A stretch of 64,000 nucleotides of DNA from Ranitomeya imitator (Eukaryota), in the NCBI RefSeq assembly GCF_032444005.1, contig NC_091290.1:7502001-7566000 (forward strand), written 5' to 3'. Both the position numbers and the translations under genes were made by a program. Of the stretch, positions 10,384-48,500 are shown in pieces. The notes under the pieces are model-generated. The model saw only the letters and a list, made by a program, of their open reading frames with translations. It was not told the DNA's origin and did not search any database. Position 1 is the first letter of the stretch. Every line of letters starts with the position of its first letter.

Positions 10384-10389
10384 AATAAA
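10384..10389 (+). terminator. FNBP4 polyadenylation signal
   Basis: AATAAA about 760 nt after the stop, followed by U/GU-rich sequence; a second AATAAA at 10795-10800. Confidence 0.7.
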
Positions 10390-11197
10390 ACGCATTTTTA
10401 CTTGAAAAACTAAAATCTGTCTTGTGTTTTAACCTTCGAAGTGGAGCTTAAGATGGGACCTGTGATTAATCCGAACGCCGCCAGGTATGAGCAGGCTTGG
10501 CGACTACAGCTGGCCGGTGACCTGAAGGGTCCGGCGTGGCACTAGGCCGACTTCACACCCCGCCTGGGGCCGGTCACTGAGCGGTGGGGATGACCTCATG
10601 AGACAAGCGCATGATAGTGCAGTAACGCCCCTGTTCACTTGTGTGGGGTCATAACATTCTCAGCACCGCTCTACTCCAATGCCGGGGTGAGTGGCACCAT
10701 ATAAGCCCTTAAACTCCGGGGGTCCATAGCCATGTTGCACGCTTGCTCAGGGTCACTATGATTTGCAGTTTAATAGCCATGTGATTTTACATTGAATAAA
10801 ACGATGCCACGTGAGATGACAGCCTGTGGCTCACAACTGGAACAGATGAACAGAAACTAACCAAGACGCCAACTGCCTGTGCCACGTCCATTCTGAGACA
10901 GAAGTCAGCGAGGAGACGAGAAGCATTCGGTCCGGTCCCCGGGACACGCTGGAGAAACGTCTGCGATCTCACCCTGTAGTTCCTGCAATTGTTCTCCTAA
11001 CAGAAGCCATGACTGCAGCAAACCACGCGTACACATCATTGCTGCGCCATCACTTCCCTGTGTGATCACCGCTCGGTGCGCACAGCTTCTCGGGATCCTT
11101 ATTCTGGCGTCTCGGTGACATAAATCCAGTATATTTGCACATAATGAAGGAAACACGTCACGACGCACAGTCAGCCTCATTCTGTGACGTGATGGAG

Positions 11198-29300: not shown

Positions 29301-32300
29301 CGTCAGACTGCCCCCAGATCACGTCAGACTGCCCCCAGCTCACGTCAGACTGCCCCCAGCTCACGTCAGACTGCCCCCAGATCACGTCAGACTGCCCCCA
29401 GATCACGTCAGACTGCCCCCAGATCACGTCAGAATGCCCCCAGATCACGTCAGACTGCACCCAGATCACGTCAGACTGCACCCAGATCACGTCAGACTGC
29501 ACCCAGATCACGTCAGACTGCCCCCAGATCACGTCAGAATGCCCCCAGATCACGTAAGACTGCCCCCAGATCACGTCAGACTGTCCCCATCTCACGTCAG
29601 ACTGCCCCCATCTCACGTCAGACTGCCCCCATCTCACGTCAGACTGCTCCCAGATCACGTCAGACTGCCCCCAGATCACGTCAGACTGCTCCCAGATCAC
29701 GGCAGACTGCCCCCAGATCACGTCAGACTGCTCCCAGCTCACGTCAGACTGCCCCCAGATCACGTCAGACTGCTCCCAGATCACGTCAGACTGCCCCCAT
29801 CTCACGTCAGACTGCCCCCAGATCACGTCAGACTGCCCCCAGATCACGTCAGACTGCTCCCAGATCACGTCAGAATGCCCCCAGATCACGTCAGACTGCC
29901 CCCACATCACGTCAGACTGCCCCCAGATCACGTCAGACTGCCCCCAGATCACATCAGACTGCCCCCAGATCACGTCAGACTGCCCACAGATCACGTCAGA
30001 CTGCCCCCAGATCACATCAGACTGCCCCTGGATCACGTCAGACTGCCCCCGGCTTGCTGGTAGTTTGCTTGCTGGGAGTTGTAGCGCCAAATCTTAGGCA
30101 CTGCAGGTTACTGACTCCTGATTTAGCAGATATCACTGTGCTCATTAAATGGCCTTAAAAATTGTCTTAATGTGTAAAATAGAGGATCTCATTAATAACT
30201 CCAAAGCCTCAGATACTATTTTATTGTTTTAAAAACTTACGGACCACCCATTGTCTTGGTGGTCTGAATATAACTCTGCAGTTGCAGAAGCAGGAAGGAG
30301 GGGAAGATGTCACAGACAGACAGATTTTCCCCAGAGAAGAGACGTTTTTCTGCTGAGCCTTCCTTCCTGATCCGTGCATACACTGCCCTCAATAATGCCA
30401 GTGCAGCAGTCCTGTGCAGTCGCTCTGCTGTGGACTGGGACACTACAGAATCTGCTGGGTGTTAGCAATGTGTAGAAGTAAAAAAATCAAATGCAAAAAA
30501 AACAAAAACAAAGAGCACCTATGGGAAAAGACTACAGATATAGCCCCGCCCCCGAGGACCCAACACAAAACATCCCTCATATAAAAATATTTACATCTCA
30601 CCAGACATTTATAGCAAGTCTTGTCGGTAGGCCATAAATGTCCGGAATGGGAACACCCCTACAATAAACATTGCTTTCTGTTTTATTCTAGGGCATTTCA
30701 GGCCATCAGGTTACTCACACTTTCATAGCTTTCTGGAGATTGCCGCTTTCAAATCGGGACTCAAACTGTAAATCGTGGCTGTTCTTCCCATTCATATTTG
30801 CTGGCACATTAGTGGAACAACGGCGCCCGCCAGCACGAGAGCCGGTGAAATAGGAGCCCTTGTAAGCTGGAAGTAGAATACTACCAATCAGATGTATTCT
30901 CAGACAGTATGTCAGTATATAGAGGGTATGTATAATATACAGTATATATATACACCATTGTAAACCACTGGTGGGTAAGTTATGTGGTTGAAGCATTACA
31001 CGGGGTCTTTCAGCTGAATACATGGACATACTTGGTCTCCAGATGGAGACTTGTTCTTCTTTGGGCATTCTTGACTATAGATAAGGGATACAAATAAGAG
31101 GTTCTTATCTTTAAAAGACTTTGATATGATTTTGATATTAGGAGCTTTTTGGACAATTCCCTCAGGGAGTAGTTGGGTGTTTGGCGCTGCTCACCATTAA
31201 GTAAGACCACCCTAACAAGCAGACTTGACCGTGTTATTACACCACACGGTGTCACCATTACCTTGGCTGATTTCATAGACCACTTTGCCTTCCCCCTCGG
31301 AGGTGTACGGCATGGCTTCCTTTCCCGTATGTCTGTAGAACGGCTCCGGATTTGGGGGCTCGCACTCTGCAGGCACAATACATGATGTAGGTTTACTAGG
31401 CACATAACATTCATTGCTGCGGCTGAGGACAGGGTCCCACAAGGGGAAATAAGAGGATTTCTGTACTGGAAATGTTTACAAATCTCCTATCTGCTGTGTA
31501 AAGTTCCCTGCGCTGAAGATCTGACGTGTGCGACGTGCCAGTCTATGCTGCCGATACTCACCAATATGACTGATCTCCTCAGAAATAACGGCACACTCAG
31601 TGGGCCAGCGCGGAGGCTTTAGGAGGCCATTCTTCTTGGAGGTAGAAAACAAATCTCTGGGTTCGCTGAGGCGCGGGATGCCCTGTCCTTCCTGACTATC
31701 GAACACAATCTGGCGGCTCTTGAACACGGCACTCTCCAGCAGCAATGAATCTGCAGGGGAAGAAAGAAAAAGATTAGCTAAACAAAACTGGTCTCACGGG
31801 CCGAGACCCCCAGACATCGGCTGTAATCTATGGGGGTGATTCATTCCTCTGCAGAGCAGTACAGGGTGTACTCATTAAACTCTACAGGCTGTCCAATGTG
31901 GCCACAGCAATACGCGCAGACCCGCCATGGAGCTACGCCATAACGCCACGACACCCCACCGCGATACGCAGCGGCACTAGAGCGCACACATACAAATCAG
32001 CTTCTTCTGGTCATCCGGGGTAGACTGTCTGTCGGAATCACTGTCTGTCACTTCTTTTCTTTGGTTCCTCACTGCCGGTCGCAGTAAGATCTCTTTTACT
32101 TTTTCTTCATTCTCTGGTAAAAAATATGTATAAAGTATGAGTGCCCCAGGGCGAAAACTGGAAACCAATCTCCCCCGCTCTCATGTGATTTGTGGTACTG
32201 ATCTCTTCATATGAACATGTAGTCCCGTCTCCAGGTCCCCCCATAATTATATTTCTATCACCCAGGACCCTCTAACTAATGGCTGCTGGGGCACAGGCTC

Positions 32301-34196
32301 TACTGTTGTGTCCTTACCTTTATAATAGCCGTAATATCTCAGGTGACGTCGCATGAAGCTCTCGTAGGGGTCGGTAAGGAGCTGGAAAAGCCGTGAGATC
32401 AAATTAGATCCCTCACATAATAGTAATGACAATGTCTCCTCCATAGAAACAATAATAGGTTGGGGTCTCCAGTACAAGTGACACAGAGGCTGCATATGTG
32501 AGCGGCCCCCGACTCATTCACTGCCCACTAAATGCCTGACCAGGGAAAATGGGGTCCAGGGATCCTGATCGCTAATGATTGTGGGGGGATAAACCTCTGC
32601 CAGAGGAGTCGGGAGCTGGAGGGGGAATAGACAGGGGGGTCCCTCTCCCCAGTAACACGTGGCCAATACCTGGTGCACATATGTATGGGGGAGTTGGGAA
32701 AGAATAGTTGGCACATGTGTATGTGTCAGTGCACCAGAGCTGGAATCTCAGTGCATGGATAGATACTGCTGGGCTTCAATATGCCCGATCCTATAAGCCT
32801 CCCTTATATCTGAGATGACGCTTTTACATTAGACTGTCAGCTCCTCTACGCTGCGGTGAAAGCTTCCTGCACCTTTATCCATGGGCACAATAACGATGAT
32901 CAGTAGATGCCAACTCGGGACAAAGCTTCGGGCCCGGCCCCGTAATGTTCTGGCAGCGCAATGTTTGGCCTCCATGGCGTCCCCGCGTACATGGCGATCT
33001 GTGGTTAGGAGTCTCGGGAGGAGACTTGTGTACATGGTTCAGGCTCCTCACTACGAGGTGAACTAGTGTAATGGAGGGGCCGGGGTGGTCCCAACACAGG
33101 AGGAGGAAAGAACTGGGGCAGTACGATTGTAGGACAATGTGAGGGGTGAAATAATTAGGAGCGACGGGAAAGAAGGATAAGAAAGGAGAGCGTGAAGACT
33201 CTAGAGAGACCAGAACACTGAGACCCCGCCCGGCTGGGGGTGTAGGGGGATTACAGGGGATTCGGGGAAGTGTTTGATGCAGGGAATTTGTATGCCAAGA
33301 TTTGGGGCATCGTGTTCAAAAGTAGGGGCATGTGCAAGACTGCGGCATTGGAGAGAGGGCGGAGGGAACCCGGGGAGAGGAAGGAGGGACCCCCGGGGAG
33401 AGGGCGGAAGGACCCCCGGGGAGAGGGCGGAAGGACCCCCGGGGAGAGGACGGAGAGACCCCGGGGAGAGGACGGAGAGACCCCGGGGAGAGGACGGAGA
33501 GACCCCGGGGAGAGGACGGAGAGACCCCGGGGAGAGGGCGGAGGGAACCCGTGGAGAGGATGGAGGGACCCCCGGGGAGAGGACGGAGAGACCCCGGGGA
33601 GAGGACGGAGAGACCCTGGGGAGAGGACGGAGAGATCCAGGGGAGAGGACGGAGAGACCCCGGGGAGAGGACGGAGAGACCCCGGGGAGAGGACGGAGAG
33701 ACCCCGGGGAGAGGACGGAGAGACCCCGGGGAGAGGACGGAGAGACCCCGGGGAGAGGACGGAGGGACCCCCGGGGAGAGGACGGAGAGACCCCGGGGAG
33801 AGGACGGAGAGACCCCGGGGAGAGGGCGGAGGGACCCCCGGGGAGAGGACGGAGGGACCCCCGTGGAGAGGACGGAGGGACCCCCGTGGAGAGGACGGAG
33901 GGACCCCCGGGGAGAGGGCGGAGGGACCCCCGGGGAGAGGACGGAGGGACCCCCGGGGAGAGGACGGAGAGACCCCGGGGAGAGGACGGAGAGATCCCGG
34001 GGAGAGGACGGAGGGACCCCGCGGAGAGGGCGGCCTCTTATTTGGTGTCACCTACAGCCGGGGGCTTCACTATTACAATGACCGCAGCACCGGAAGTATA
34101 CACGTAGCGATCACTGTCCGCTGTCACCCGCAGAACTACAGACGGGGGCACCGGGGACGGGCGGGAAAGGAACCAGAGAATCACCTCAGGAGTCAT
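11345..34196 (-). CDS. AGBL2: Cytosolic carboxypeptidase 2 (tubulin deglutamylase, M14 family)
   Basis: Confident exons: 32318-32381 ([18 protein letters not shown]), 31994-32113, 31562-31750, 31262-31366, 30719-30866 ([13 protein letters not shown]), 27308-28090, 26373-26532 ([10 protein letters not shown]), 26089-26215 (SYTMESTF), 24891-24991, 24648-24778, 23639-23705, 22577-22675, 17453-17539. Probable: ATG exon 34185-34227 (MTPE, ATG 34194-34196), 15923-16010, 15765-15851, 15440-15673, 13038-13092, 12775-12905, 12201-12334, terminal 11345-11356. Exons near 16204-16258 and 16944/16983-17044 are unresolved. Position between FNBP4 and MTCH2 favours AGBL2 over AGBL3. Confidence 0.9.
11517..11684. 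mobile_element. TTAA-flanked MITE (T2/Kolobok-like), degenerate
   Basis: TTAA|AGGGGTTGTCC at left, TTAA at 11681-11684; internal inverted repeats AAACATG/CATGTTT and TTTCAG/CTGAAA. Confidence 0.45.
13212..14638. repeat. 29-bp minisatellite with 7-8-mer higher-order structure (AGBL2 intron)
   Basis: Unit GAGAGCGGGACCTGCATCTGACCGCCGCA, about 49 copies; a +5-nt variant recurs at 13574, 13782, 14019, 14227. Confidence 0.95.
16560..16925. repeat. ~30-34-bp minisatellite
   Basis: CCCCCAAAGCTGCATCAGGATCTCCAAACCAGTG-like units, about 11 copies. Confidence 0.9.
17857..22458. repeat. 63-bp minisatellite, ~73 copies, in an AGBL2 intron
   Basis: Constant 63-bp period (21-residue repeats in the ORF track); lies between AGBL2 exons 22577-22675 and 17453-17539. 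Confidence 0.97.
23796..24578 (+). mobile_element. Internally deleted Tc1/mariner element
   Basis: TA|CAGGTG start and CCCCTG|TA end; transposase C-terminal motif [18 protein letters not shown] at about 24122-24175. Confidence 0.75.
25378..26065. mobile_element. Non-autonomous DNA transposon / MITE with imperfect terminal inverted repeats (Harbinger-like, inferred)
   Basis: ATTCTCAGACAAG 25409-25421 vs CTTGTCTGAGAAT 26019-26031; GGCTACACGGTGA vs TCACTGTGCAGCC at the ends. Confidence 0.45.
27308..28090 (-). CDS. AGBL2: AGBL2 783-nt catalytic-domain exon
   Basis: [24 protein letters not shown]...[12 protein letters not shown] (HxxE zinc motif)...[21 protein letters not shown]; flanked by CAG| and |GTGAGT. 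Confidence 0.97.
28251..30050. repeat. 21-bp minisatellite, ~86 copies
   Basis: Unit AGACTGCCCCCAGATCACGTC; one 20-bp unit near 28935 shifts the frame. Confidence 0.97.
33352..34030. repeat. 22-bp purine-rich minisatellite
   Basis: Unit CCCCGGGGAGAGGACGGAGAGA, about 30 copies. Confidence 0.95.
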
Positions 34197-34317
34197 GGCG
34201 GTCGGAGGGAAGGACACAGAAAACCACCTGAGGAGAAAGAAGACGGATATTATCACCAGAGGAGAAACAACGGAAATGTCACAGATTATAATCACCAGAA
34301 GCCTCCTCCGCCCCCGC

Positions 34318-36375
34318 ACACACCGGCTCCGGTCTCCTCCAGTCACACCGGCTCCGGTCCCCGTTCTTCTCCCCGGTCTCCTCCTTCTCTCACACCGGCT
34401 CCGGTCTCCTCCTTCTCCCCGGTCTCCTTCTCTCACACCGGCTCCGGTCTCCTCCTCCTGTCGCACCGGCTCCGGTCTCCTCCTTCTCTCACACCGGCTC
34501 CGGTCTCCTCCTTCTCTCACACCGGCTCCGGTCTCCTCCTTCTCTCACACCGGCTCCGGTCTCCTCCTTCTCTCACACCGGCTCCGGTCTCCTCCTTCTC
34601 TCACACCGGCTCCGGTCTCCTCCTTCTCTCACACCGGCTCCGGTCTCCTCCTTCTCTCACACCGGCTCCGGTCTCCTCCTTCTCTCACACCGGCTCCGGT
34701 CTCCTCCTTCTCTCACACCGGCTCCGGTCTCCTCCTTCTCTCACACCGGCTCCGGTCTCCTCCTTCTCTCACACCGGCTCCGGTCTCCTCCTTCTCTCAC
34801 ACCGGCTCCGGTCTCCTCCTTCTCTCACACCGGCCCTGGTCTCCTCCTTCTCTCACACCGGCCCTGGTCTCCTCCTTCTCTCACACCGGCTCCGGTCTCC
34901 TCCTTCTCTCACACCGGCCCTGGTCTCCTCCTTCTCTCACACCGGCTCCGGTCTCCTCCTTCTCTCACAGCGGCCCTGGTCTCCTCCTTCTCTCACACCG
35001 GCCCTGGTCTCCTCCTTCTCTCACACCGGCTCCGGTCTCCTCCTTCTCTCACACCGGCCCCGGTCTCCTCCTTCTCTCACACCGGCTCCGGTCTCCTCCT
35101 TCTCTCACACCGGCCCCGGTCTCCTCCTTCTCTCACACCGGCTCCGGTCTCCTCCTTCTCTCACACCGGCCCCGGTCTCCTCCTTCTCTCACACCGGCTC
35201 CGGTCTCCTCCTTCTCCCCGGTCTCCTTCTCTCACTCCGGCCCCGGTCTCCTCCTTCTCTCACACCGGCCCCGGTCTCCTCCTTCTCTCACACCGGCTCC
35301 GGTCTCCTCCTTCTCTCACACCGGCTCCGGTCTCCTTCTCTCACACCGGCCCCGGTCTCCTCCTTCTCTCACACCGGCTCCGGTCTCCTTCTCTCACACC
35401 GGCCCCGGTCTCCTCCTTCTCTCACACCGGCCCCGGTCTCCTCCTTCTCTCACACCGGCTCCGGTCTCCTCCTTCTCTCACACCGGCCCCGGTCTCCTCC
35501 TTCTCTCACACCGGCTCCGGTCTCCTCCTTCTCTCACACCGGCCCCGGTCTCCTCCTTCTCTCACACCGGCTCCGGTCTCCTCCTTCTCTCACACCGGCT
35601 CCGGTCTCCTCCTTCTCTCACACCGGCCCCGGTCTCCTCCTTCTCTCACACCGGCTCCGGTCTCCTCCTTCTCTCACACCGGCCCCGGTCTCCTCCTTCT
35701 CTCACACCGGCTCCGGTCTCCTCCTTCTCCCCGGTCTCCTTCTCTCACTCCGGCCCCGGTCTCCTCCTTCTCTCACACCGGCCCCGGTCTCCTCCTTCTC
35801 TCACACCGGCTCCGGTCTCCTCCTTCTCTCACACCGGCTCCGGTCTCCTTCTCTCACACCGGCCCCGGTCTCCTCCTTCTCTCACACCGGCCCCGGTCTC
35901 CTCCTTCTCTCACACCGGCTCCGGTCTCCTCCTTCTCTCACTCCGGCCCCGGTCTCCTCCTTCTCTTACACCGGCCCCGGTCTCCTCCTTCTCTCACACC
36001 GGCTCCGGTCTCCTCCTTCTCCCGGTCTCCTTCTCTCACTCCGGCCCCGGTCTCCTCCTTCTCTCACACCGGCTCCGGTCTCCTCCTTCTCTCACACCGG
36101 CCCCGGTCTCCTCCTTCTCTCACACCGGCTCCGGTTTCCTCCTTCTCCCCGGTCTCCTCCTGTCACACCGGCTCCGGTCTCCTCCTTCTCCCCGGTCTCC
36201 TCCTGTCACACCGGCTCCGGTCTCCTCCTTCTCCCCGGTCTCCTCCTGTCACACCGGCCCGGGTCTCCTCCTTCTCTTCGGTCTCCTCCTTCTCTCACAC
36301 CGGCCCCGGTCTCCTCCTTCTCCCCGGTCTCCTCCTTCTCCCCGGTCTCCTCCTGTCACACCGGCTCCGGTCTCC
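34318..36375. repeat. 28-bp pyrimidine-rich minisatellite (AGBL2 intron 1)
   Basis: Unit CACCGGCTCCGGTCTCCTCCTTCTCTCA, about 73 copies. Confidence 0.97.
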
Positions 36376-36416
36376 GTTCTTCTCCAGCTCCAGGCCCCTC
36401 CTCTCTACACTCTCAC

Positions 36417-36523
36417 CGTTGCCTGGAGACGCGGGTCACGTGCTCCCCCTGCACTTCCGGCCTGTAGAGAAGGTTTCTCCTTGACGTTACGACCCGGCTT
36501 CCGTGACGTATCCAAGATGGCGG
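36417..36523. promoter_or_regulatory. Bidirectional CpG promoter shared by AGBL2 (-) and MTCH2 (+)
   Basis: AGBL2 non-coding exon 1 donor AACG|GTGAGA at 36416; X-box-like GTTGCCTGGAGAC 36418-36430; E-box CACGTG 36437-36442; ETS ACTTCCGG 36453-36460 and CTTCCG 36498-36503; CRE-like TGACGT 36482 and 36504; YY1 CAAGATGGCGG 36513-36523 over the MTCH2 ATG. Confidence 0.75.
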
Positions 36524-39500
36524 ACGTGGGCAGTCAGCTGCTGCTGGGCTCCGGCCTCACCGTCCTGTCCCACCCGCTGATGTACGTGAAGATGCTGGTG
36601 CAGGTGAGTGCGGAGCCCGGGGAGCCGAGGCCGGAGCGTCACCTGTGGGGGCGGGGAGGTCAGAAATGGTGGAGAAGGGGATGTCACATGGTGGCCGGTA
36701 CTGGAGGCAGCTGTCACCTCCTCCCTGTGCCCGGTGTACTGGAGCCCTGTGCCCGGTGTACTGGAGCCCTGTGCCCGGTGTACTGGAGCCCTGTGCCCGG
36801 TGTACTGGAGCCCCGTGCCCGGTGTACTGGAGCCCTGTGCCTGGGAGCCGTCGCCCCGTGCCCGGTGTATTGCAGCACTGTGCCTGGGAGCCATGGCCAC
36901 ATTTTGTCTTTTCTTTTATTCCTTGTTTCTGATATTTGTATTTTTATTATATTTTATTTACATTCGGTTTAAAGTAGGAAGAAAAAGGAAAATGAAAGAG
37001 GAAGCGCCAGATATAAAGGGAGGAGGAGGAGGAGGTGTGCGGACTGCGGTCACTCACATTTCTGGGGGCTTTGGGTATTTCTGCCGCATGTCATCTTGTT
37101 CGTCGCTGTGTATATTTCTGCGTTCTGATACAGGTGTATATATGGTCTGGCTCAGTCTCTCTATGAATGACATTGTGACACGCTCTCGCCGTGCTGGTTC
37201 CCCCTGTCGTGTTACCCCCTGACGTTTGCTACTTGCGATCCTCACCCCTCTTTGGAGTGTACGACCATTTCCGTCTCTACGTTTCCGCGCCTGCGCTGTA
37301 GACCGTGTTTCTCCAGATCTCCCACACATATGGTGACGCTTCCAATGTTGATGTTTCTTCGATATTTCTTCCATACCTGACAACTGATGGTCGACCCCTG
37401 AGGAAGGTGCGGTGGCGACACGTGCGGGGGCCACTTCCATCAGACGTTTCTGCCCCTTCTCTGCTCCTGTGTCTCTGGCATATCACTTGCAGGTTATGTT
37501 TTGTATTTCCGTCCTATACAACAAGCGTTTGGATATTTCACTTTTCGTTTCTTGATTTATTCTTTGCCTATCTTCAGTGGATTGGCGTAAGGAAGCAGCG
37601 TCACGGCATCACTCACATTTACGTGGGATTTGGGTATTTCTGCTCTCGTGGTGTTTGCTGCATATAATAATATTGTGCATTCTGGTACCTGTGTATGTTT
37701 ATATATTATGTTTCAAGCTAAAAAAAATATATATTTTCTATATATTTAATTCATATTTTTTTCGTTCACGCATACTTGTCACGCTTGCACTTTATATTTT
37801 TTTATTTTATTACTTTTAGACTTATTTGTGAGGTTGTTATATTTTTTTTCGACGTCCGGTTATCAGTCGTTGTCTGGTTCAGTCTCTGTGGTCCATGCGG
37901 CACCAATCTTTTTCTTGTGGTTTTTTTGTTACATAACTTTACTGTCAACTTTCTATTTTCATACGACTATTGTGAAGCGCAGGTGCGGTGGATGCTTCCG
38001 GCAAACTTTCCATCTGCATTGTTTGCACAAACCTCTGCATTAATTAGAGAAGGGCCTGGTTACCTTTCTTGATAGAATATTCCCGGTTATGGTCACTGAT
38101 TATGTGATGGATCCAGGAATCTCGTCTGATCGCCATCTGTGGAGTCGGGGAGGAATGTTTCCCTCATTGTGGGGCTATTGGGGGGTTTTGCCTTCCTGTG
38201 GATTAACATGTTACGCTTTATGTTGTACTCAATGGGCTTATATCTTCATTCAACTTTAAAATGATGAAAGTTATTTGCATATATCAAGGACTTTACCTGC
38301 CTCCACTGCACTCCTGATGAAGCCTCCTTTCTCGTGGCGAAACGTGTGAGGCTTTCTCCCACCCGTCTCGTCCTCGGCTTACTGCTCCTTCCTATACCTA
38401 TTGTCCTGTAGTCACTTCACATCTCTTGTGCTTATTGCCCCATTACGGGGTTTATTATTACGATTGTGTTTTGTGGCTTATGAGCTCTGATATGTTATTA
38501 TACTTCCTATATTATTTGTTATATTGAGGTTTTCTTCCTACAGGACCAGATTCTTGTTTATTGCTCGATGCTTGGTTTGGATCTTGCACTTACAGGTCCT
38601 ATGGGTCAATACTTTATTTAGTTTTAAGGGTTACTCTGCTAGCCAGACGGCTGTGTAAATCGGACCACAGTGCACGGACTGGCCGCGGGTCCCGACCCGA
38701 GCGTGTCTGTCTCCATGGTGACGTGTAGTTCTGCACTGGAGCTCTATACTCGAAACGGTGCATTTTAAATCAATGTTTTTGCCAACTCTGGCTGCAGAAT
38801 ATGTAGTAAGGTCACAAAACCCAGTGACGGTCCTGTTGTAGGGTTTAGCCCGCACCTCTCACTTCCACATCGGGGGACTAGGGGGCGCCGCTGAGGTCGC
38901 TGACTGCTACTACTGTAGGGCCTCTGCTGCATACAGAGCGGTGTGTATAGGGCTCAGGGCCGTGTGTATAGGAGCTGGGTGTGGGCCGTGCACAGATCTG
39001 CGCTCCTGGGGTGCGGTGCTGGGGTCGGTGCCAGTGAACGCATGAAGCTGGCACGTCCGGCTCCTCCGCCGGAGATTGCTGCAGATCAGGTCTTCGTGGC
39101 GTCACGCAGCCAACAAGCTAATGATTATCTCCTGTGTGATAGTCCATAGTGCGGTCAGGGGTGAAGTCCCCGTCTGCCGTTTACCTGCCTCCCATCTCAC
39201 CTTTACCATAGACTTCTGTGGTGATTGTAAAGGTGCATAGCACGCGGCAGCTCCATGTGCCCCACCCGAGTACGGAAGACCAGAGGAGCCACGTTCAGGG
39301 GAAGTAATGGTGGTGATGGCATGTCTGCAGGAGTCACCATAAATGCCTGATGCAGGACCCTGTCTCTAGAACGGGGGTCTGCCATTCTTATTCCACTAAA
39401 TATGACACAAGAATGAATGGGGAGGTGGGCAAACATGCATGGTGGTCTCCTTTAGCCGTGAAAGAGTGTTGCAGACAGGTTTACATCCATCCCTCTGGAG

Positions 39501-42500
39501 CAGCTCCTGGGCCGTGCATGTAATCTCATCCTGTGCATCATGGGCCGTGCATCTAATCTCATCCTGTGTCATGGGTCGCTGGGCCGTGCATCTAATCCCA
39601 TCATGTGTGTCATGGACCGCTGGGCCGTGCATCTAATCCCATCATGTGTGTCATGGACCGCTGGGCCGTGCATCTAATCTCATCCTGTGCATCATGGGCC
39701 GTGCATCTAATCTCATCCTGTCATGGGTCGCTGGGCCGTGCATCTAATCCCATCATGTGTGTCATGGACCGCTGGGCCGTGCATCTAATCCCATCATGTA
39801 GCGGTGCTCCAGGTGCGCAGAACGTCTGTGGAGAAAATCTAATCTACCCGAAGACTTCATCCATTATAAGTTCATGCTAAAGACATACAATTCTGCCCTT
39901 CACCTCTCCAAATAAACCTATTTCAACACCCTCATCACCTCCCTGTCCAATAACCCTAAACGTCTCTTTGACACGTTCCAGTCCCTACTCAACCCAAGAG
40001 AGCAGGCCCCAACCACGGATCTCCGTGCTGACGATCTGGCCAATTACTTCAAAGAAAAAATTGACCACATTCGACAGGAAATCATCTCCCAATCTCTTCA
40101 TACCATGCACTGTCCTCCCTCCCCCACTGCATCTAGTTCACTCTCTGACTTTGAAGCAGTTACAGAAGAAGAAGTAAGCAGGCTCCTTGCATCTTCTCGC
40201 CCGACCACTTGCACCAGTGACCCCATTCCGTCACATCTCCTCCAGTCCCTTTCCCCGGCTATCACCTCTCACCTAACAAAAATATTCAACCTTTCCCTCA
40301 CTTCCGGTATTTTTCCCTCCTCATTTAAGCATGCCATCATACATCCATTACTTAAAAAACCATCCCTCGATCAAAACTGTGCCGCTAATTATAGACCTGT
40401 CTCTAATCTTCCCTTCATCTCTAAACTCCTCGAACGCCTGGTCCACTCCCGTCTTACCCGCTATCTCTCAGATAACTCTCTTCTCGACCCTCTTCAATCT
40501 GGCTTCCGCTCTTTACACTCTACTGAAACTGCCCTCATTAAAGTCTCTAATGACCTACTAACAGCTAAATCTAATGGTCACTACTCCATGCTAATTCTCT
40601 TGGATCTCTCTGCAGCATTCGACACTGTGGATCATCAGCTCCTCCTCACTATGCTCCGCTCCATCGGCCTCAAGGACACCGTTCTCTCCTGGTTCTCCTC
40701 CTATCTCTCTGACCGATCCTTCACTGTATGTTTTGCTGGTTCCTCCTCCTCTCACCTTCCCCTTACTGTTGGGGTTCCTCAAGGATCAGTCCTAGGCCTC
40801 CTCCTCTTCTCTTTGTATACTGCCCCTATTGGACAAACAATCAGTAGATTTGGTTTCCAGTACCATCTCTATGCTGACGACACCCAATTATACACTTCTT
40901 CTCCTGATATCACACCGACCTTTTTAGAAAACACCAGTGATTGTCTTACCGCTGTCTCTAACATCATGTCCTCCCTCTATCTGAAACTAAACCTGTCAAA
41001 AACTGAACTCCTCGTGTTCTCTCCCTCTACTAACCTACCTTTGCCTGACATTGCCATCTCCGTGTGCGGTTCCACCATTACTCCAAAGCAACATGCCCGC
41101 TGCCTTGGGGTCATCCTTGATTCTGACCTTTCATTCACCCCCCACATTCGATCACTGGCTCGCTCTTCTTACCTGCATCTCAAAAACATTTCTAGAATTC
41201 GCCCTTTTCTTAATTTCGACTCTGCAAAAACTCTGACTGTTTCACTTATTCATTCTCGTCTGGACTATTGTAACTCTCTACTAATCGGCCTCCCTCTTGC
41301 AAAACTCTCCCCGCTCCAATGTCCTGAATGCTGCAGCCAGGATCATATTCCTCACCAACCGTTACACCGATGCCTCTACCTTGTGCCAGTCATTACACTG
41401 GTTACCCATCCACTCAAGAATCCAGTACAAAACTACTACCCTCATCCACAAAGCACTCCATGGCTCAGCACCACCCTACATCTCCTCCCTGGTATCAGTC
41501 TACCACCCTACCCGTGCCCTCCGCTCCACTAATGACCTCAGGTTAGCATCCTCAATAATCAGAACCTCCCACTCCCGTCTCCAAGACTTTACACGTGCTG
41601 CGCTGATTCTTTGGAATGCACTACCTAGGTTAATACGATTAATCCCCAATCCCCACAGTTTTAAGCGTACCCTAAAAACTCATTTGTTCAGACTGGCCTA
41701 CCGCCTCAATGCATTAACCTAACGATCCCTGTGTGGCCTATTTATAATAAAAAAAAAAAAAAAGGTTCCTCGCATCATGTTCTCATTCACTTTATGCAGT
41801 TATTAGCCCTCTGTGTCTGTACTGCTACATACTTAGGCAGGTAACTGGTTCATGCAGCTTTACATGAACACCCGAGCCTTACACTATGGCCGGTCCGAAT
41901 AACTAAAGCAATTGTTACCATCCACCTCTCGTGTCTCCCCTTTTCCCCATAGTTTGTAGCTTGCGAGCAGCAGGGCCCTCATTCCTCCTGGTATCTGTTT
42001 TGAACTGTATTTCTGTTATGCTGTAATGTCTATTGTCTGTACAAGTCCCCTCTATAATTTGTAAAGCGCTGCAGAATATGTTGGCGCTATATAAATAAAA
42101 TTATTATTATTATTATTATCATGTGTCATGGGTCGCTGGGCCGTGCATCTAATCCCATCATGTGCGTCATGGTCTGTGAGCCGTACATCTAATCCCATCC
42201 TGTGTGTCATGGTCTGTGAGCCGTGCATCTAATCCCATCATGTGCGTCATGGTCTGTGGGCTGTGCATCTAATCCCATCATGTGCGTCATGGTCTGTGGG
42301 CCGTGCACCTAATCCCATCATGTGCGTCATGGTCTGTGAGCCGTGCATCTAATCCCATCATGTGCGTCATGGTCTGTGGGCCGTGCATCTAATCCCATCA
42401 TGTGCGTCATGGTCTGTGGGCCGTACATCTAATCCCATCATGTGCGTCATGGTCTGTGGGCCGTGCATCTAATCCCATCATGTGCGTCATGGTCTGTGGG

Positions 42501-45500
42501 CCGTACATCTAATCCCATCATGTGCGTCATGGTCTGTGGGCCGTACATCTAATCCCATCATGTGCGTCATGGGTTGCTGGGCCATGCATCTAATCCCATC
42601 ATGTGCGTCATGGTCTGTGGGCCGTGCATCTAATCCCATCCTGTGCGTCATGGGTCGCTGGGCCGTGCATCTAATCCCATCCTGTGTGTCATGGTCTGTG
42701 GGCCGTGCATCTAATCCCATCATGTGCGTCATGGTCTGTGGGCCGTACATCTAATCCCATCATATGCGTCATGGTCTGGGGGCTGTGCATCTAATCCCAT
42801 CATGTGCGTCATGGTCTGTGGGCCGTGCATCTAATCCCATCATGTGCGTCATGGTCTGTGGGCCGTGCATCTAATCCCATCCTGTGCGTCATGGGTCGCT
42901 GGGCCGTGCATCTAATCCCATCATGTGTGTCATGGTCTGTGGGCCATGCATCTAATCCCATCATGTGCGTCATGGTCTGTGGGCCGTGCATCTAATCCCA
43001 TCATGTGCGTCATGGTCTGTGGGCCGTGCATCTAATCCCATCCTGTGCGTCATGGGTCGCTGGGCCGTGCATCTAATCCCATCATGTGTGTCGTGGTCTG
43101 TGGGCCGTGCATCTAATCCCATCCTGTGTGTCGTGGTCCGCTGGGCCGTGCATCTAATCCCATCATGTGTCATACACTGTGTATCTAATCCCCCAGCGTG
43201 TGGTACGGCGAGCAGCACCAAGTAACAGAATGGGCCGCTGGCGTCCTGAGTCCACATCTCTGTATTTCCCGATGGAAATTTCAGCAGCTGCTCCCCCTAG
43301 TGTTTATATGTGGAAAATATCAAAACTTGTTATTTTTTGTATTTTATACTATTAAGATTATATATATTTTAAAAGATAAAACATTAGTACATTTATTTAA
43401 TTGTTGAGAATTTTTTTTTTTTCTGTCCCCTTCCCTTTTTCGTAAAATGATGGTGTTCCCGCAGGCGGCCGGATCTCATATCCACAGTGCCGAGCGCCCC
43501 ACATCGTTCCTCGTTTCGCCCTTGGCCCCCTTCTTCCGCCATCTCTTGTTCCTGCTCTTGGCCGGGCCGAGCTCCGGGGGGTTCTGGATCCTCTGTGATA
43601 TGGCCGTCAGGTTGGGGTGAAGCTCGGGGCAGACGTCGTGGGGGCCGACGCACATGTCCTTCTTGTTATAGAAGAAGTGTCTCCTCTTCGGCTTCGCTGT
43701 GGTCAGACATTCTGCAAACTGCTTGTCGCACTCGCACGCCATCCGGCCGCACAGCGTGGAGGAACGGCATTGTGTGCGCGCCGGGCCGCACGAGAACTGG
43801 TAGAGCTGCCACTTCACCTTCCCGTGGCAGCGCAGGTCAAGCCTGGAATAGCGGTAACAGCAGTCGTGGCGGAGGCAGCACCGGTCCACGTCATCCACCG
43901 CGGCCCCTGCCCCTCCTGTGCCGCAGTAACAGCCGTACAGGTTAATGCCCAGCAGGGGCACCTTCAGCCGCTCTCTGTAGCACCACAGGGTCACCACTAG
44001 ATCCAGCACGCCGCGTCTCTGACGAGCCGGAGCGCCGCTGCAGGACGTCCAGTGCTGGAGGTAACACACGCAGACCAAGAGGAGCAGCAGCAGCTTGGAC
44101 ATGTCGGGTCAGGCCGGAGGCTTCTGCGGAGACACAGCCGTTATTCTACTTAGTCTCATTCTCTTGTTGTGTTTTTATTTCTGTATTTTGTAACAAAAAA
44201 ATAAAATTGCGAAACATGAAACGTCCACGAGATAGAATTACAGATCAGTGTATAATAACTGGGACCCCGGAGGGAAACTACGGGGGAGAACTATAGGTGC
44301 TGGAACTTCCTTTCTCTCTTCACCTAGCATGCAGTGCTCCAACCATGCTATGCCGGATCCAAAGGTCCACTTATACCTATATTCTGTGTGACAGACTGGA
44401 GAGGAAAAGATGGGGGACAGAGACCCGTCCCCCCCTTCCCCCGCACACACAGTCTGCAGAGGGGGACAGAGACCCGTCCCCCCCCCTTCCCCCGCACACA
44501 CAGTCTGCAGAGGGGGACAGAGACCCGTCCCCCCCCCTTCCCCCGCACACACAGTCTGCAGAGGGGGACAGAGACCCGTCCCCCCCCCTTCCCCCGCACA
44601 CACAGTCTGCAGAGGGGGACAGAGACCCGTCCCCCCCTTCCCCCGCACACACAGTCTGCAGAGGGGGACAGAGACCCGTCCCCCCCCTTCCCCCGCACAC
44701 ACAGTCTGCAGAGGGGGACAGAGACCCGTCCCCCCCTTCCCCCGCACACAGTCTGCAGAGGGGGACAGAGACCCGTCCCCCCCTTCCCCCGCACACACAG
44801 TCTGCAGAGGGGGACAGAGACCCGTCCCCCCCCCTTCCCCCGCACACACAGTCTGCAGAGGGGGACAGAGACCCGTCCCCCCCTTCCCCCGCACACACAG
44901 TCTGCAGAGGGGGACAGAGACCCGTCCCCCCCCTTCCCCCGCACACACAGTCTGCAGAGGGGGACAGAGACCCGTCCCCCCCCTTCCCCCGCACACACAG
45001 CCTGCAGAGGGGGACAGAGACTCGTCCCCCCCCTTCCCCCGCACACACAGTCTGCAGAGGGGGACAGAGACCCGTCCCCCCCCTTCCCCCGCACACACAG
45101 TCTGCAGAGGGGGACAGAGACCCGTCCCCCCCCTTCCCCCGCACACACAGCCTGCAGAGGGGGACAGAGACCCGTCCCCCCCTTCCCCCGCACACACAGT
45201 CTGCAGAGGGGGACAGAGACCCGTCCCCCCCTTCCCCCGCACACACAGTCTGCAGAGGGGGACAGAGACCCGTCCCCCCCTTCCCCCGCACACACAGTCT
45301 GCAGAGGGGGACAGAGACCCGTCCCCCCCTTCCCCCGCACACACAGTCTGCAGAGGGGGACAGAGACCCGTCCCCCCCTTCCCCCGCGCACACAGTCTGC
45401 AGAGGGGGACAGAGACCCGTCCCCCCCCCCTTCCCCCGCACACACAGTCTGCAGAGGGGGACAGAGACCCGTCCCCCCCTTCCCCCGCACACACAGTCTG

Positions 45501-48500
45501 TAGAGGGGGACAGAGACCCGCCGCACACTACCTGTAATCCATCTGTCTAGAAGGGGGGCCGGCACCTTGACTTTAGAGGAGTCCGTCAGCCCATGGAATA
45601 CAAGCGTACGACCCGTGCACACAGTAACGTGTATTTCTGCTGTCCCGTCCCTCGCTGCTCGTCTGTCCATACACCCTCCTTATAACACCGTATAATAGCT
45701 CCGCACCTGTGTGTCACTGCTCGTCTGTCCATACACCCTCCATATAACACCGTATAATAGCTCCGCACCTGTGTCGCTGCTCGTCTGTCCATACACCCTC
45801 CTTATAACACCGTATAATAGCTCCGCACCTGTGTCGCTGCTCGTCTGTCCATACACCCTCCTTATAACACCGTATAATAGCTCCGCACCTGTGTCACTGT
45901 TCGTCTGTCCATACACCCTCCTTATAACACCGTATAATAGCTCCACACCTGCGTGTCACTGCTCGTCTGTCCATACACCCTCCTTATAACACCGTATAAT
46001 AGCTCCGCAACTGTGTGTCACTGCTCGTCTGTCCATACACCCTCCTTATAACACCGTATAATAGCTCCACACCTGCGTGTCACTGCTCGTCTGTCCATAC
46101 ACCCTCCTTATAACACCGTATAATAGCTCCGCACCTGTGTGTCACTGCTCGTCTGTCCATACACCCTCCATATAACACCGTATAATAGCTCCGCACCTGC
46201 GTGTCACTGTTCGTCTGTCCATACACCCTCCTTATAACACCGTATAATAGCTCCGCACCTGTGTGTCACTGCTCGTCTGTCCATACACCCTCCTTATAAC
46301 ACCGTATAATAGCTCCGCACCTGCGTGTCACTGTTCGTCTGTCCATACACCCTCCTTATAACACCGTATAATAGCTCCGCACCTGTGTCGCTGCTTGTCT
46401 GTCCATACACCCTCCTTATAACACCGTATAATAGCTCCGCACCTGCGTGTCACTGCTCGTCTGTCCATACACCCTCCTTATAACACCGTATAATAGCTCC
46501 GCACCTGTGTCGCTGTTCGTCTGTCCATACACCCTCCTTATAACACCGTATAATAGCTCCGCACCTGTGTCGCTGCTCGTCTGTCCATACACCCTCCTTA
46601 TAACACCGTATAATAGCTCCGCACCTGCGTGTCACTGCTCGTCTGTCCATACACCCTCCTTATAACACCGTATAATAGCTCCGCACCTGCGTGTCACTGT
46701 TCGTCTGTCCATACACCCTCCTTATAACACCGTATAATAGCTCCGCACCTGTGTCGCTGCTCGTCTGTCCATACATCCTCCTTATAACACCGTATAATAA
46801 ATAGCTCCGCACCTGCGTGTTGCTCTCGGGCGACGCTCTCGCTCGGCTCTGCTGCTGTCACCCTCTGCCCCTTTATATATCCCATGTGCTGGGGTCGGGC
46901 GCAGCGTCCTTAACCCTTGCATCACCGTACCCGTTGTGCGGGGGGCACAGCCGTGGTGTCCGGCCACCATTCTGTCTGCGGTGACCCCTCACTCGTTCCC
47001 CGTCTGCAGGGTTTCGGGGGCTGCTTCTTGTGGAACACTGCGGCCCCTTCCATGAACGGGTTACTCTGGAGCTCGCGGTCTCGTAGCGCTCAGGACTAAA
47101 TATATCACATCTGGGTTTTTTCCACCCATCAATTATCTTCCTTTGGCCGTGGTTCATGGACAGTTGGGTTTGGAGACCTCAGAAGTGAATCCTCGGAGTC
47201 TTGGAGTCTCACTTTGTGCTCCGTTCGCTCCTGGGTCACAGATGTGTAAGGAGCAGCGTGCACGGCCTCACCTTTGCTCCTCCATGGCACACGCACGCAT
47301 GTGTCTGCGCTGTGATCGCCATTGTGTTGGGATTTCCATCGTTTGTGGTTTTCTTCAGATTCAGACTTTTCTGCTTTTGCTTTGTAGGTGGGACACGAGC
47401 CAATGCCACCAACGTTGGGCCGAAACCTCTTTGGGCGTCAGGTGTACCAACTGCCAGGATTCTTCGCCTACGGTGAGCGCACACTGTGTTCCCGGCGGCG
47501 CTCACCCCATGTACAGCGTCATCTAACGATCGGCCGGTGTCATATTGGGGGTTTATTACGACGGCGTTCTGCCCGCCGTCTGTGCATAGACCCTCAAGCA
47601 TTGCCGGATGGAAGCTGAGCTCAGGGGATAGATATCAGGCTGCGGTTTGTACCAGCAGAACTGTGAATGCCGCTCTGGAGGACGTTACCTACTTTCTGCC
47701 TGTGGAGTCTGTTCTGCTTTTCACCCGCAGATGCTCAGTAATCTGTTCTTTTATGTATTTGCAGCAAAACACATCATTAAAATTGATGGAAAGCGAGGAC
47801 TCTTCAAGGGCCTGACCCCCCGACTGTGCGCCGGAGCGGTGGGCACGGTGGTGCACAGCAGAGTATTGCAGGTAACTGGTTTTATCATTGGCAATGGGTC
47901 AGACTGGTGACGTCAACGCTTCTGGACACTGGATAGCGTAGATGCACTGATGAGGAATATGGTGTCACTCTATAATCGATGCTGCATTGCGCCAATCAAA
48001 ACGGACAGATGGGCGCCAGGCAAAGAAGTGCAACCATGCCCAACAATGGGGCACTGCGGGCGCGACTGAGGGGAGCAGGAGGTCACCCCTCTCTTGCTAA
48101 AGCCACCGATGTCTACTGGATGGCCTCTGTTTGAATGCCGCCTCCCCCGCCCTTTTAAGAGGGGTCCCCTGGATGTGGCCTCGCCTTTTTTTTTGGGAGA
48201 GGGTCCCCTGGATGTGGCCTCACTTTTTTTGGGAGGGGGTCCCCTGGATGTGGTCTCACCTTTTTTTGGGAGGGGGTCCCCTGGATGTGGCCTCACCTTT
48301 TTTTGGGAGGGGGTCCCCTGGATGTGGCTTCACCTTTTTTTTGGGGAGAGGGTCCCCTGGTTGTGGCTTCACCTTTTTTGGGAGGGGGTCCCCTGGATGT
48401 GGCTTTACCTTTTTTTTGGGGAGAGGGTCCCCTGGTTGTGGCTTCACCTTTTTTGGGAGAGGGTCCCGTGGTTGTGGCTTCACCTTTTTTGGGAGGGGGT

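What the first reader, a model, noticed from the sequence alone, without database searches (positions are those of the whole stretch)
43476..44102. Intact, single-exon, cationic group X-like secreted PLA2 nested antisense in MTCH2 intron 1
Seen: an uninterrupted 208-aa ORF with signal peptide, RQRR propeptide, Ca loop (YGCYCGTGG), His48/Asp49/Tyr52/Asp99 equivalents and 16 mature-core Cys. It also has its own splice acceptor (44124) and AATAAA (43392). Established: having both the group I-type (11-77) and group II-type (50-C-terminal) disulfides plus a basic-site propeptide is the group X signature, and mammalian PLA2G10 has a multi-exon CDS and, to my knowledge, is not at the MTCH2 locus. By hand count the core is about +8 net (20 K/R vs 12 D/E) and about +15 with the tail; strong cationic charge is the property linked to bactericidal group IIA enzymes. 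Inference: a retroposed, functionally retained sPLA2 paralogue, possibly for host defence or skin/gland secretion, hidden in a housekeeping mitochondrial gene.
Basis: partly seen in the sequence, partly recalled or inferred. Interest (0 to 1): 0.9.

Follow-up and report, generated by a model that had tools for sequence, protein, structure and literature searches.

The report
Ancient intronless secreted phospholipase inside MTCH2
This is a real, transcribed and conserved frog gene for a secreted phospholipase A2. It belongs to an old, unnamed vertebrate branch of that enzyme family, sits backwards inside the first intron of MTCH2, and is already predicted in public databases under misleading names.

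Summary
Window 43476-44102 (-) is an intact 208-aa secreted PLA2 precursor. It has a signal peptide, an RQRR pro-site, a calcium loop, the His/Asp/Tyr/Asp catalytic set and 16 core cysteines. The core carries +8 net charge and the 50-aa tail +7.

It lies antisense in MTCH2 intron 1 (about 36604-47387). RNA-like assemblies cover the exon 16-30 times deeper than its flanks. One contig splices a 5' exon from a 62-bp minisatellite onto the acceptor at 44124/44125.

- It is not a recent or frog-specific retrocopy. Orthologues with a single coding exon occur in anurans, caecilians, a salamander, turtles, squamates, coelacanth, sharks and sturgeons, always beside or inside MTCH2.
- No bird, mammal or teleost protein scores as a member.
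- The core is under strong constraint (dN/dS 0.07).
- It forms its own clade, not PLA2G10. The "group X" cysteine pattern also occurs in OC90 domains and a shark/ray paralogue, so it does not diagnose group X.
- A host-defence role is untested.

The protein is already in NCBI/UniRef for this genome, under ad hoc "-like" names. The gene call is therefore not new, but recognising the orthology group may be.

The parts
43476..44102 (-). Complete coding sequence (208 codons plus TGA) of the sPLA2 precursor, all in one exon
   Evidence: ORF list. Pfam PF00068 at E 2e-23. Identical to public protein P0302.
44034..44102 (-). Predicted signal peptide, residues 1-23 ([23 protein letters not shown])
   Evidence: By inspection: a hydrophobic core and small residues at -3/-1. 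AF2 models it as a helix at residues 2-21 detached from the core. No dedicated predictor was run.
44013..44033 (-). Propeptide APARQRR, ending in a furin-type R-x-R/K-R site before the mature N-terminus G31
   Evidence: R27 and R30 are invariant in 21 family members. The same R-x-x-R|[GS] site is seen across the family.
43629..44012 (-). Mature catalytic core, residues 31-158. It contains the Ca loop (43911-43937), H79/D80 (43863-43868), D126 (43725-43727) and 16 Cys.
   Evidence: Alignments. AF2 pLDDT above 90 over the core. Foldseek TM 0.87-0.91 to solved sPLA2s. dN/dS 0.07.
43479..43628 (-). C-terminal extension of 50 aa. It has a short helix with an N-glycosylation sequon (NLT), then a disordered basic stretch ([10 protein letters not shown]) ending in ALWI.
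   Evidence: Net charge +7, and an NxS/T sequon in the tail of most members examined. pLDDT is 77-81 for residues 161-180 and below 60 after that. dN/dS 0.28.
44123..44125 (-). Splice acceptor (AG at 44125-44124); the coding exon starts at 44123
   Evidence: An X10 contig joins the exon to a 62-bp repeat unit at this point. The acceptor TCTCCGCAG is conserved in E. coqui.
45655..46799 (-). 62-bp minisatellite (about 19 copies) that supplies the non-coding 5' exon. Copies carry ATGGACAGACGAGCAG...ACACAG|GTGCGG, with the donor of the nearest fitting copy at 45706-45705. The exact copy used is ambiguous.
   Evidence: Tandem repeat finder. The loose end of the X10 contig matches 5 copies with 1 mismatch. 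The predicted 228-aa isoform of R. variabilis starts with the same MDRRAA.
43392..43475 (-). 3' UTR with an A12 run (43411-43422) and AATAAA (43392-43397)
   Evidence: Sequence. The X1 contig ends at 43411, so the true 3' end is undetermined.
36517..36603 (+). MTCH2 exon 1 ([29 protein letters not shown]), followed by a GTGAGC donor
   Evidence: 90-97% identity to frog 'mitochondrial carrier homolog 2'. tblastn and translation.
47388..47472 (+). MTCH2 exon 2. Intron 1 is therefore about 36604-47387 and contains the whole PLA2 gene on the opposite strand.
   Evidence: tblastn with D. tinctorius MTCH2, P0308. Frame reading.

Best explanation
This is a genuine, expressed, selectively constrained gene for a conventional (His/Asp, Ca2+-dependent) secreted phospholipase A2 proenzyme.

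It belongs to a distinct, ancient gnathostome orthology group. The whole coding sequence of that group is one exon, and it is physically tied to the 5' end of MTCH2. In tetrapods it is nested antisense in MTCH2 intron 1.

Inferred mode of action:
1. The signal peptide is removed.
2. A furin-type convertase cuts after RQRR and frees the G31 N-terminus that sPLA2s need for interfacial activation.
3. The 128-residue core, held by eight disulfides, binds Ca2+ through the YGCYCGTGG loop and D80.
4. It hydrolyses the sn-2 ester of glycerophospholipids with H79/D126.
5. The moderately basic core (+8) and the basic, glycosylated 50-aa tail probably favour anionic membranes or glycosaminoglycans.
6. 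The tail may be trimmed at a second convertase-like site (RNKR|W).

Shown here: gene integrity, family membership, fold, conservation, synteny, and transcription with splicing. Inferred only: processing, catalysis, charge-driven targeting and physiological role.
For: Family membership and fold:
- Pfam PF00068 at E 2e-23; PDB sPLA2 chains at E 7e-20.
- AF2 pLDDT 83; Foldseek TM 0.87-0.91 and rmsd about 2 A to pancreatic, IIE, IIA and group X structures.
- Catalytic and Ca-loop residues and all 16 Cys are invariant across 18-21 members.

Selection: dN/dS against E. coqui is 0.15 overall, 0.07 in the core and 0.28 in the tail.

Distribution:
- Members occur in anurans, caecilians, a salamander, turtles, squamates, coelacanth, sharks/skates and sturgeon/paddlefish.
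- An exhaustive HMM scan found only 12 representatives at E<=1e-30, and 10 of them belong to this family.

Gene structure and position:
- A single coding exon sits next to or inside MTCH2 in every locus inspected. It is nested in intron 1 in frogs, a caecilian, a turtle and a snake.
- In sturgeon it lies head-to-head, 1.4 kb from MTCH2 exon 1. In a shark it is adjacent to MTCH2.

Phylogeny: the family is monophyletic (96/86) and separate from G10+G2 (96/85) and from G1B.

Transcription:
- Exon contigs have depth 61 and 73 against 2-5 for adjacent intron in two studies. A DNA-like run shows equal depth in both.
- One contig carries a GT-AG junction on the minus strand.
- A related species' assembly holds the CDS with two in-frame 6-nt insertions.
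Against: - No enzymatic, proteomic or tissue evidence was obtained.
- The runs are only guessed to be RNA, and they are contigs. Expression level, strand and transcript ends are therefore not measured. Strand rests on the one splice junction.
- Signal peptide and convertase cleavage are read from sequence only.
- The deep relationship to PLA2G10 is unresolved. An AU test does not reject a family+G10 clade (p 0.31).
- Absence from birds, mammals and teleosts rests on annotated proteomes, not on genome searches.
Confidence: 0.85

Rival explanations
1. It is simply the frog orthologue of PLA2G10 (group X), or a recent retrocopy of it.
For: - It has the same 16-Cys layout and a furin-type propeptide.
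- PLA2G10 proteins are the next-best named hits.
- Some sturgeon entries are labelled 'Group 10' or 'PA2GX'.
- The AU test does not reject a family+G10 clade (p 0.31).
Against: - True PLA2G10 genes coexist with family members in turtle and squamate lineages (in Thamnophis elegans itself), and a G10-like protein exists in the frog Nanorana.
- The family is monophyletic at 96/86, and G10 groups with G2 at 96/85.
- There is a score gap: members score 177 bits or more, G10 about 95-110 bits.
- G10 in Thamnophis spans 2.8 kb for 156 aa at another locus, so it is multi-exon.
- The intronless gene is at MTCH2 from shark to frog, so it is not recent.
Confidence: 0.04
2. It is a cationic host-defence or skin/gland-secretion enzyme, a functional analogue of bactericidal group IIA.
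For: - A basic core (+5 to +13) is conserved across the family, and frogs have a very basic tail.
- It is a secreted proenzyme.
- A toad parotoid-secretion study assigned a de novo peptide to the X. tropicalis family member.
Against: - That peptide (CDQEFAECLK, BLAST E about 3) does not match the tryptic peptides expected from the Bufo family protein (…[12 protein letters not shown]).
- The charge is moderate compared with human IIA (from general knowledge).
- The gene is ancient and present in sharks, turtles and snakes, so it is not a poison-frog or skin-gland speciality.
- The tissue of the expressing runs is unknown.
Confidence: 0.15
3. It is a structural, non-enzymatic PLA2-like matrix protein, akin to the otoconins. 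Its distribution would then track taxa with non-calcitic otoconia.
For: - OC90 PLA2-like domains attach next to this family in the tree, though weakly (90/40), and share the 16 Cys.
- One Hyla entry is auto-named 'otoconin-90-like'.
- The absence from birds and mammals is suggestive, but only from general knowledge.
Against: - Every family member keeps His48, Asp49, Tyr52, Asp99 and the Gly-rich Ca loop. The OC90 domains have lost Asp49, Tyr52 and a loop glycine.
- Core dN/dS of 0.07, with catalytic residues invariant, argues that catalysis is retained.
- The OC90 attachment joins two long branches.
Confidence: 0.06
4. It is a decaying processed pseudogene, or a chance ORF transcribed only as part of MTCH2 intron 1.
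For: - The coding sequence is intronless and lies inside an intron.
- There is an A12 run about 55 nt after the stop.
Against: - dN/dS is 0.07-0.15, and intact orthologues span more than 400 My of divergence.
- Exon depth is 16-30 times that of the flanking intron, and the gene has its own minus-strand GT-AG splice.
Confidence: 0.01

Closest known systems
Group X secreted phospholipase A2 (PLA2G10)
   Same: - PF00068 fold.
- His/Asp catalysis and the Ca loop.
- All 16 cysteine positions, including both Cys11/Cys77 and Cys50/C-terminal Cys.
- An N-terminal propeptide ending in a dibasic convertase site.
- Structural match to 1le6 with TM 0.89 and rmsd 1.8 A.
   Different: - Only 33-38% identity.
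- A separate, well-supported clade that coexists with true PLA2G10 in turtle, squamate and anuran lineages.
- Coding sequence in one exon at the MTCH2 locus, against a multi-exon gene elsewhere.
- A basic core and a 14-60-aa C-terminal extension that the PLA2G10 sequences used here lack (156-168 aa overall).
Pancreatic group IB sPLA2 (PLA2G1B)
   Same: - The best sequence and fold hits in the PDB are porcine, bovine and human IB enzymes. The very best is 1y6o, a porcine enzyme engineered with the group X disulfide.
- Both have Cys11-Cys77 and a propeptide.
   Different: - IB lacks Cys50 and the C-terminal Cys (0/10).
- IB forms a distinct clade (100/98).
- IB has no C-terminal extension.
Group IIA/IIE/V sPLA2s, including viperid venom PLA2s (whose names the databases borrow for this gene)
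   Same: - The fold and catalytic machinery.
- The Cys50-C-terminal disulfide positions.
- A basic surface in some members.
   Different: - Group II/V lack Cys11/Cys77 (0/11 and 1/11) and form a separate clade with G10.
- Database names such as 'crotoxin basic subunit CBb-like' and 'taipoxin alpha chain-like' are artefacts of best-hit naming, not evidence of toxin kinship.
Otoconin-90 PLA2-like domains, and an intronless paralogue confined to sharks and rays (Amblyraja, Narcine, Pristiophorus)
   Same: - Both share the 16-Cys layout.
- The shark/ray paralogue is the sister clade (97/94) and is also encoded by one exon.
- OC90 domains attach nearby, but weakly (90/40).
   Different: - OC90 domains have lost Asp49, Tyr52 and a loop Gly.
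- The shark/ray paralogue lies at another locus, next to a RasGEF gene.

Membership tests
Conventional secreted PLA2 (Pfam PF00068; group I/II/V/X collection) | Ca2+-binding loop Y-G-C-x-C-G-x-G-G plus Asp49 | tested here: met
   Y56GCYCGTGG64 and D80 are present, and the loop Y/G/C positions checked (Y56, C58, C60, G61, G63) and D80 are invariant in 18 family rows.
Conventional secreted PLA2 (Pfam PF00068; group I/II/V/X collection) | Catalytic His48/Asp99 dyad with Tyr52 | tested here: met
   H79, D126 and Y83 are invariant. The profile match is E 2e-23.
Conventional secreted PLA2 (Pfam PF00068; group I/II/V/X collection) | Three-helix plus beta-wing sPLA2 fold | tested here: met
   AF2 model at pLDDT 83, with the core above 90. 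Foldseek TM 0.87-0.91 to many solved sPLA2s.
Conventional secreted PLA2 (Pfam PF00068; group I/II/V/X collection) | N-terminal secretion signal | tested here: inconclusive
   A hydrophobic N-terminus with a plausible CSG|A cleavage site was seen by inspection. No signal-peptide predictor was available.
Conventional secreted PLA2 (Pfam PF00068; group I/II/V/X collection) | Ca2+-dependent sn-2 hydrolysis of phospholipids | not testable with these tools
   This needs the recombinant enzyme.
Group X sPLA2 (PLA2G10) | Eight disulfides, including both Cys11-77 and Cys50-C-terminus | tested here: met
   All 16 Cys columns are shared with 12-13 of 13 G10 rows. They are also shared by OC90 domains and the shark/ray paralogue, so the feature is not diagnostic. 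The disulfide pairing itself was not examined.
Group X sPLA2 (PLA2G10) | Propeptide removed at a dibasic convertase site | tested here: met
   RQRR|G, with R27 and R30 invariant. Cleavage itself is not shown.
Group X sPLA2 (PLA2G10) | Orthology: falls inside the PLA2G10 clade | tested here: not met
   It is a separate clade at 96/86, and G10 groups with G2 at 96/85. G10 genes coexist with the family in turtle, squamate and anuran lineages, and in the snake Thamnophis elegans both proteins are present. A sister relationship is not excluded (AU p 0.31).
Group X sPLA2 (PLA2G10) | Multi-exon coding sequence at the PLA2G10 locus | tested here: not met
   The family has one coding exon at MTCH2. Thamnophis G10 spans 2843 bp for 156 aa at another locus.
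Bactericidal group IIA-type sPLA2 | Group II disulfide pattern (no Cys11-77) and very high net positive charge | tested here: not met
   Cys11 and Cys77 are present. The core charge is +8. The comparison with human IIA charge rests on general knowledge.
Processed retrogene | Intronless coding sequence where paralogues have introns | tested here: met
   A single coding exon in 9 species, against the multi-exon G10.
Processed retrogene | Identifiable parent gene, poly(A) remnant and target-site duplications | not testable with these tools
   The event, if it happened, predates the gnathostome radiation. The A12 run after the stop is not evidence. The nearest relative, the shark/ray paralogue, is also intronless.

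The most novel reading that the evidence does not exclude
This could be an unrecognised additional group of conventional vertebrate sPLA2s: the MTCH2-linked, intronless, 8-disulfide enzymes with a C-terminal extension. The group would date to the gnathostome ancestor and would have been lost independently in mammals, birds and teleosts. Its antisense nesting in MTCH2 intron 1 has been kept for at least about 350 My in tetrapods, which hints at coupled regulation with a mitochondrial outer-membrane insertase gene. In dendrobatid frogs, a minisatellite has become its 5' exon or promoter.
Probability: 0.5. Interest if true: 0.55.

Novelty: new member of a known kind. Interest (0 to 1): 0.42.

Why it matters
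sPLA2 biology and nomenclature (IB, IIA-F, III, V, X, XII) are built on mammals. This work delimits a further catalytically intact branch that most non-avian, non-mammalian tetrapod groups examined, and several basal fish lineages, still carry. Databases label it with misleading venom-toxin or otoconin names.

Three consequences follow:
- It would correct those annotations.
- It shows that the "group X" cysteine pattern is shared more widely and is probably ancestral rather than diagnostic.
- It offers a clean case of a nested antisense gene pair conserved over hundreds of millions of years.

It does not change what is understood about how sPLA2s work.

Tried and rejected
- **Earlier findings:** look-ups by place and by words returned nothing.
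- **Literature:** nine full-text searches found no paper placing an sPLA2 at the MTCH2 locus or describing an intronless vertebrate sPLA2. The Pla2g2 evolution preprint (10.1101/583344) discusses an "otoconin-22-like" gene as the nearest outgroup of g2. It does not mention MTCH2 or intronless genes, and I could not equate the two.
- **Parotoid secretion lead:** a toad parotoid-secretion proteome (PMC6707386) assigns the de novo peptide CDQEFAECLK to the X. tropicalis family member, at BLAST E about 3. It is rejected as evidence.
- **Naming MTCH2:** an Atlas search on one MTCH2 exon gave only "mitochondrial carrier". One attempt failed on stop codons. The name was settled by a region-restricted homology search.
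- **Structure:** the first AF2 model, from the 21-sequence alignment, was poor (pLDDT 60). It was replaced by an 80-sequence alignment (pLDDT 83).
- **Missing DNA:** DNA for Ranitomeya, Bufo, Rhinatrema and Chiloscyllium could not be fetched. dN/dS therefore rests on E. coqui; comparisons with more distant species are saturated.
- **Upstream conservation:** an alignment of the upstream 200 nt across five species showed conservation only of the acceptor between the two frogs.
- **Tree resolution:** the AU test could not decide whether the family is sister to G10.
- **Otoconin-22:** it could not be included in the tree, because no tool-supplied sequence was available.
Full report
**1. What is in the window**

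The minus strand of 43476-44102 holds an uninterrupted 208-codon ORF (sequence).
- It matches Pfam Phospholip_A2_1 (PF00068) at E 2.2e-23 over residues 49-139.
- It matches solved pancreatic, crotoxin, IIA, IIE and group X enzymes at E down to 7e-20.

- a hydrophobic N-terminus;
- RQRR just before G31;
- the calcium loop YGCYCGTGG (residues 56-64);
- H79/D80/Y83/D126, the equivalents of His48/Asp49/Tyr52/Asp99;
- 16 cysteines in a 128-residue core;
- 20 K/R against 12 D/E in the core (+8), and +7 more in the 50-residue tail.

An in-frame TGA lies just upstream of the ATG, so 44102 is the start codon in this species.

**2. Host gene**

Translated comparison with the turtle locus L001 shows a series of conserved plus-strand exons around the ORF.
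- The first, at 36517-36603, reads [29 protein letters not shown].
- It is 90-97% identical to frog proteins named "mitochondrial carrier homolog 2".
- Mapping the Dendrobates tinctorius MTCH2 protein places exon 2 at 47388 and later exons up to 53381.

Intron 1 is therefore about 36604-47387. It contains the whole PLA2 gene on the opposite strand.

**3. Transcription**

Contigs of four public runs from four studies were laid on 43170-44411.
- In X1, a 741-nt contig covers 43411-44151 exactly at depth 61, while neighbouring intron contigs have depth 2-3.
- In X10, a contig covers 43514-44126 at depth 73, against 4.6 next door. It continues for 89 nt into sequence that is a unit of the 62-bp minisatellite at 45655-46799. 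The junction is ...ACACAG|AAGCC, which means a GT-AG intron on the minus strand with its acceptor at 44125-44124.
- X5 shows equal low depth on exon and flank, so it behaves as DNA and serves as an internal control.
- X6, from a related organism, carries the coding sequence with 18 listed base differences and two in-frame 6-nt insertions.

The gene is therefore transcribed from its own strand. It has at least one non-coding 5' exon.

The X1 contig reads through the acceptor to 44151, about 25 nt downstream of an AAATAAAA motif. This hints at a second, proximal start, but contigs cannot show transcript ends.

In this species the ATG in the repeat-derived exon opens a short upstream ORF or an out-of-frame ORF. 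In Ranitomeya variabilis it is in frame, which explains the predicted 228-aa isoform.

The acceptor is conserved in E. coqui. AATAAA at 43397-43392 exists, but its use is unproven.

**4. Relatives and their genomic position**

A first search found 20 close relatives: anurans at 53-90% identity, then a caecilian, a newt, a turtle and coelacanth. A profile search added squamates including snakes, both Xenopus species, sharks, skates, sturgeons and paddlefish.
- Members score 177 bits or more, while PLA2G10 proteins start at about 110 bits.
- No bird, mammal, crocodilian or teleost protein lies above the gap.
- An exhaustive HMM scan of 1.84 billion representatives found only 12 at E<=1e-30. Ten of them belong to this family, and the other two are merged models of tandem PLA2 genes.

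The coding sequence is one exon in every locus examined. Its position relative to MTCH2:

| Species | Position |
|---|---|
| Ranitomeya, Bufo, E. coqui | Nested antisense in intron 1 |
| Rhinatrema (caecilian) | Nested antisense in intron 1 |
| Mauremys (turtle) | Nested antisense in intron 1 |
| Pantherophis (snake) | Nested antisense in intron 1 |
| Sturgeon | Head-to-head, 1.4 kb upstream of MTCH2 exon 1 |
| Chiloscyllium (shark) | About 4 kb from a truncated MTCH2 model |

An AGBL2-like M14 peptidase gene lies next door in frogs, snake and sturgeon.

The linkage therefore dates to the gnathostome ancestor, and the nesting at least to the tetrapod ancestor.

**5. Constraint**

Nei-Gojobori dN/dS between the window and E. 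coqui is 0.15, with dS 1.04. By region it is 0.07 for the core, 0.28 for the tail and 0.41 for the signal and propeptide.

In a 21-sequence alignment, the catalytic residues, most Ca-loop residues, both arginines of the pro-site and 14 of the 16 core cysteines are invariant; C151 and C158 are nearly so.

**6. Place in the sPLA2 family**

I built a 74-sequence maximum-likelihood tree (LG+C20+F+G4).
- The family is monophyletic (96/86).
- Its sister is a shark/ray-only paralogue (97/94). That paralogue is also intronless but lies next to a RasGEF gene.
- OC90 domains attach weakly nearby (90/40).
- PLA2G10 groups with group II/V (96/85).
- Group IB is separate (100/98).

Clade labels were checked against solved structures and source names.

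PLA2G10 proper is multi-exon and lies elsewhere. It coexists with this family in turtle and squamate lineages (both proteins are present in Thamnophis elegans), and a G10-like protein is present in the frog Nanorana. An AU test does not reject a family+G10 grouping (p 0.31), so a sister relationship stays open, but orthology does not.

The column-by-column cysteine table shows who shares the 16-Cys layout:
- shared by this family, the shark/ray paralogue, OC90 domains and G10;
- IB lacks Cys50 and the C-terminal Cys;
- group II lacks Cys11 and Cys77.

The "group X signature" therefore looks ancestral rather than diagnostic.

**7. Structure**

With an 80-sequence alignment, AF2 gives pLDDT 83 and above 90 over residues 31-160. 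The model superposes on pancreatic, IIE, IIA, elapid and group X structures at TM 0.87-0.91 and rmsd 1.7-2.4 A.

The first 20 residues of the tail form a modest-confidence helix that carries the NLT sequon. The rest of the tail is disordered.

**8. Mechanism and function**

The steps below are inferred from the intact machinery together with established sPLA2 biochemistry:
1. secretion;
2. convertase activation at RQRR|G;
3. Ca2+-dependent sn-2 hydrolysis by the His/Asp dyad;
4. a basic surface that favours anionic interfaces.

Neobatrachian frogs have a polybasic block in the tail (KSRKKRWRRRK; [10 protein letters not shown] here). This block is also a convertase-type site, so the tail may be clipped.

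The physiological role is unknown. The host-defence idea has no support beyond charge. The only proteomic lead found does not fit this protein.

**9. Novelty**

The identical 208-aa protein is already in NCBI, UniRef and nr (P0302). Orthologues carry names such as "crotoxin basic subunit CBb-like", "taipoxin alpha chain-like", "minor isoenzyme-like", "otoconin-90-like" and "Group 10".

Nine literature searches found no description of an MTCH2-linked or intronless vertebrate sPLA2. What may be new is recognising the group as a coherent, ancient orthology group that is missing from birds, mammals and teleosts.

I rate it a new member of a known kind, of moderate interest.

Noticed in passing
window 42118-43169, 44412-45520, 45655-46799: Three large minisatellites bracket the PLA2 exon inside MTCH2 intron 1: 40 bp x 26, 49 bp x 22 and 62 bp x 19. 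The 62-bp array supplies the spliced 5' exon, and each unit carries an ATG and a GT donor.
   Followed up: partly
window 34108-36400 (+ frame) and the GC-skewed blocks 18000-22000, 28000-30000, 34000-36000: A long tandem array lies directly upstream of MTCH2 exon 1; it translates as repeated SHRLRSPPSLTPAPVSSF units. Several other blocks show strongly negative GC skew. They are probably further satellites in the MTCH2-AGBL2 interval.
   Followed up: no
window 40126-41319 (+): A reverse-transcriptase fragment (Pfam RVT_1, E 1e-20) lies in MTCH2 intron 1. It is up to 81% identical at protein level to a non-syntenic copy in the E. coqui locus (L002 19274-20635). It looks like a retroelement family shared by the two frogs.
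   Followed up: partly
window 43275-43325: A stretch of about 40-50 nt is covered at high depth by many short contigs in all four runs, each with different flanks. This suggests a short dispersed repeat just 3' of the gene.
   Followed up: no
P0041/P0042/P0261 (Rana temporaria, Lithobates pipiens): Ranid frogs have a fast-evolving 'acidic' member of the family that groups with the bullfrog orthologue. In L. pipiens it is on the same contig as MTCH2. Whether it is a divergent orthologue or a tandem duplicate is unresolved.
   Followed up: no
L006 10001-10558 (Amblyraja radiata); P0051, P0124: Sharks and rays carry a second intronless sPLA2 that is sister to this family. It lies at another locus, beside a RasGEF gene.
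   Followed up: partly
L004 (Acipenser oxyrinchus) 8493-10552: In sturgeon the PLA2 is not nested. It sits head-to-head 1.4 kb upstream of MTCH2 exon 1. The order of PLA2 and exon 1 therefore differs between sturgeon and tetrapods.
   Followed up: partly
P0045, P0122, P0046, P0123: Several public 'proteins' of 211-455 aa are merged gene models of tandem group II or IB PLA2 genes. They inflate profile scores and carry a spurious PF08398 label.
   Followed up: no
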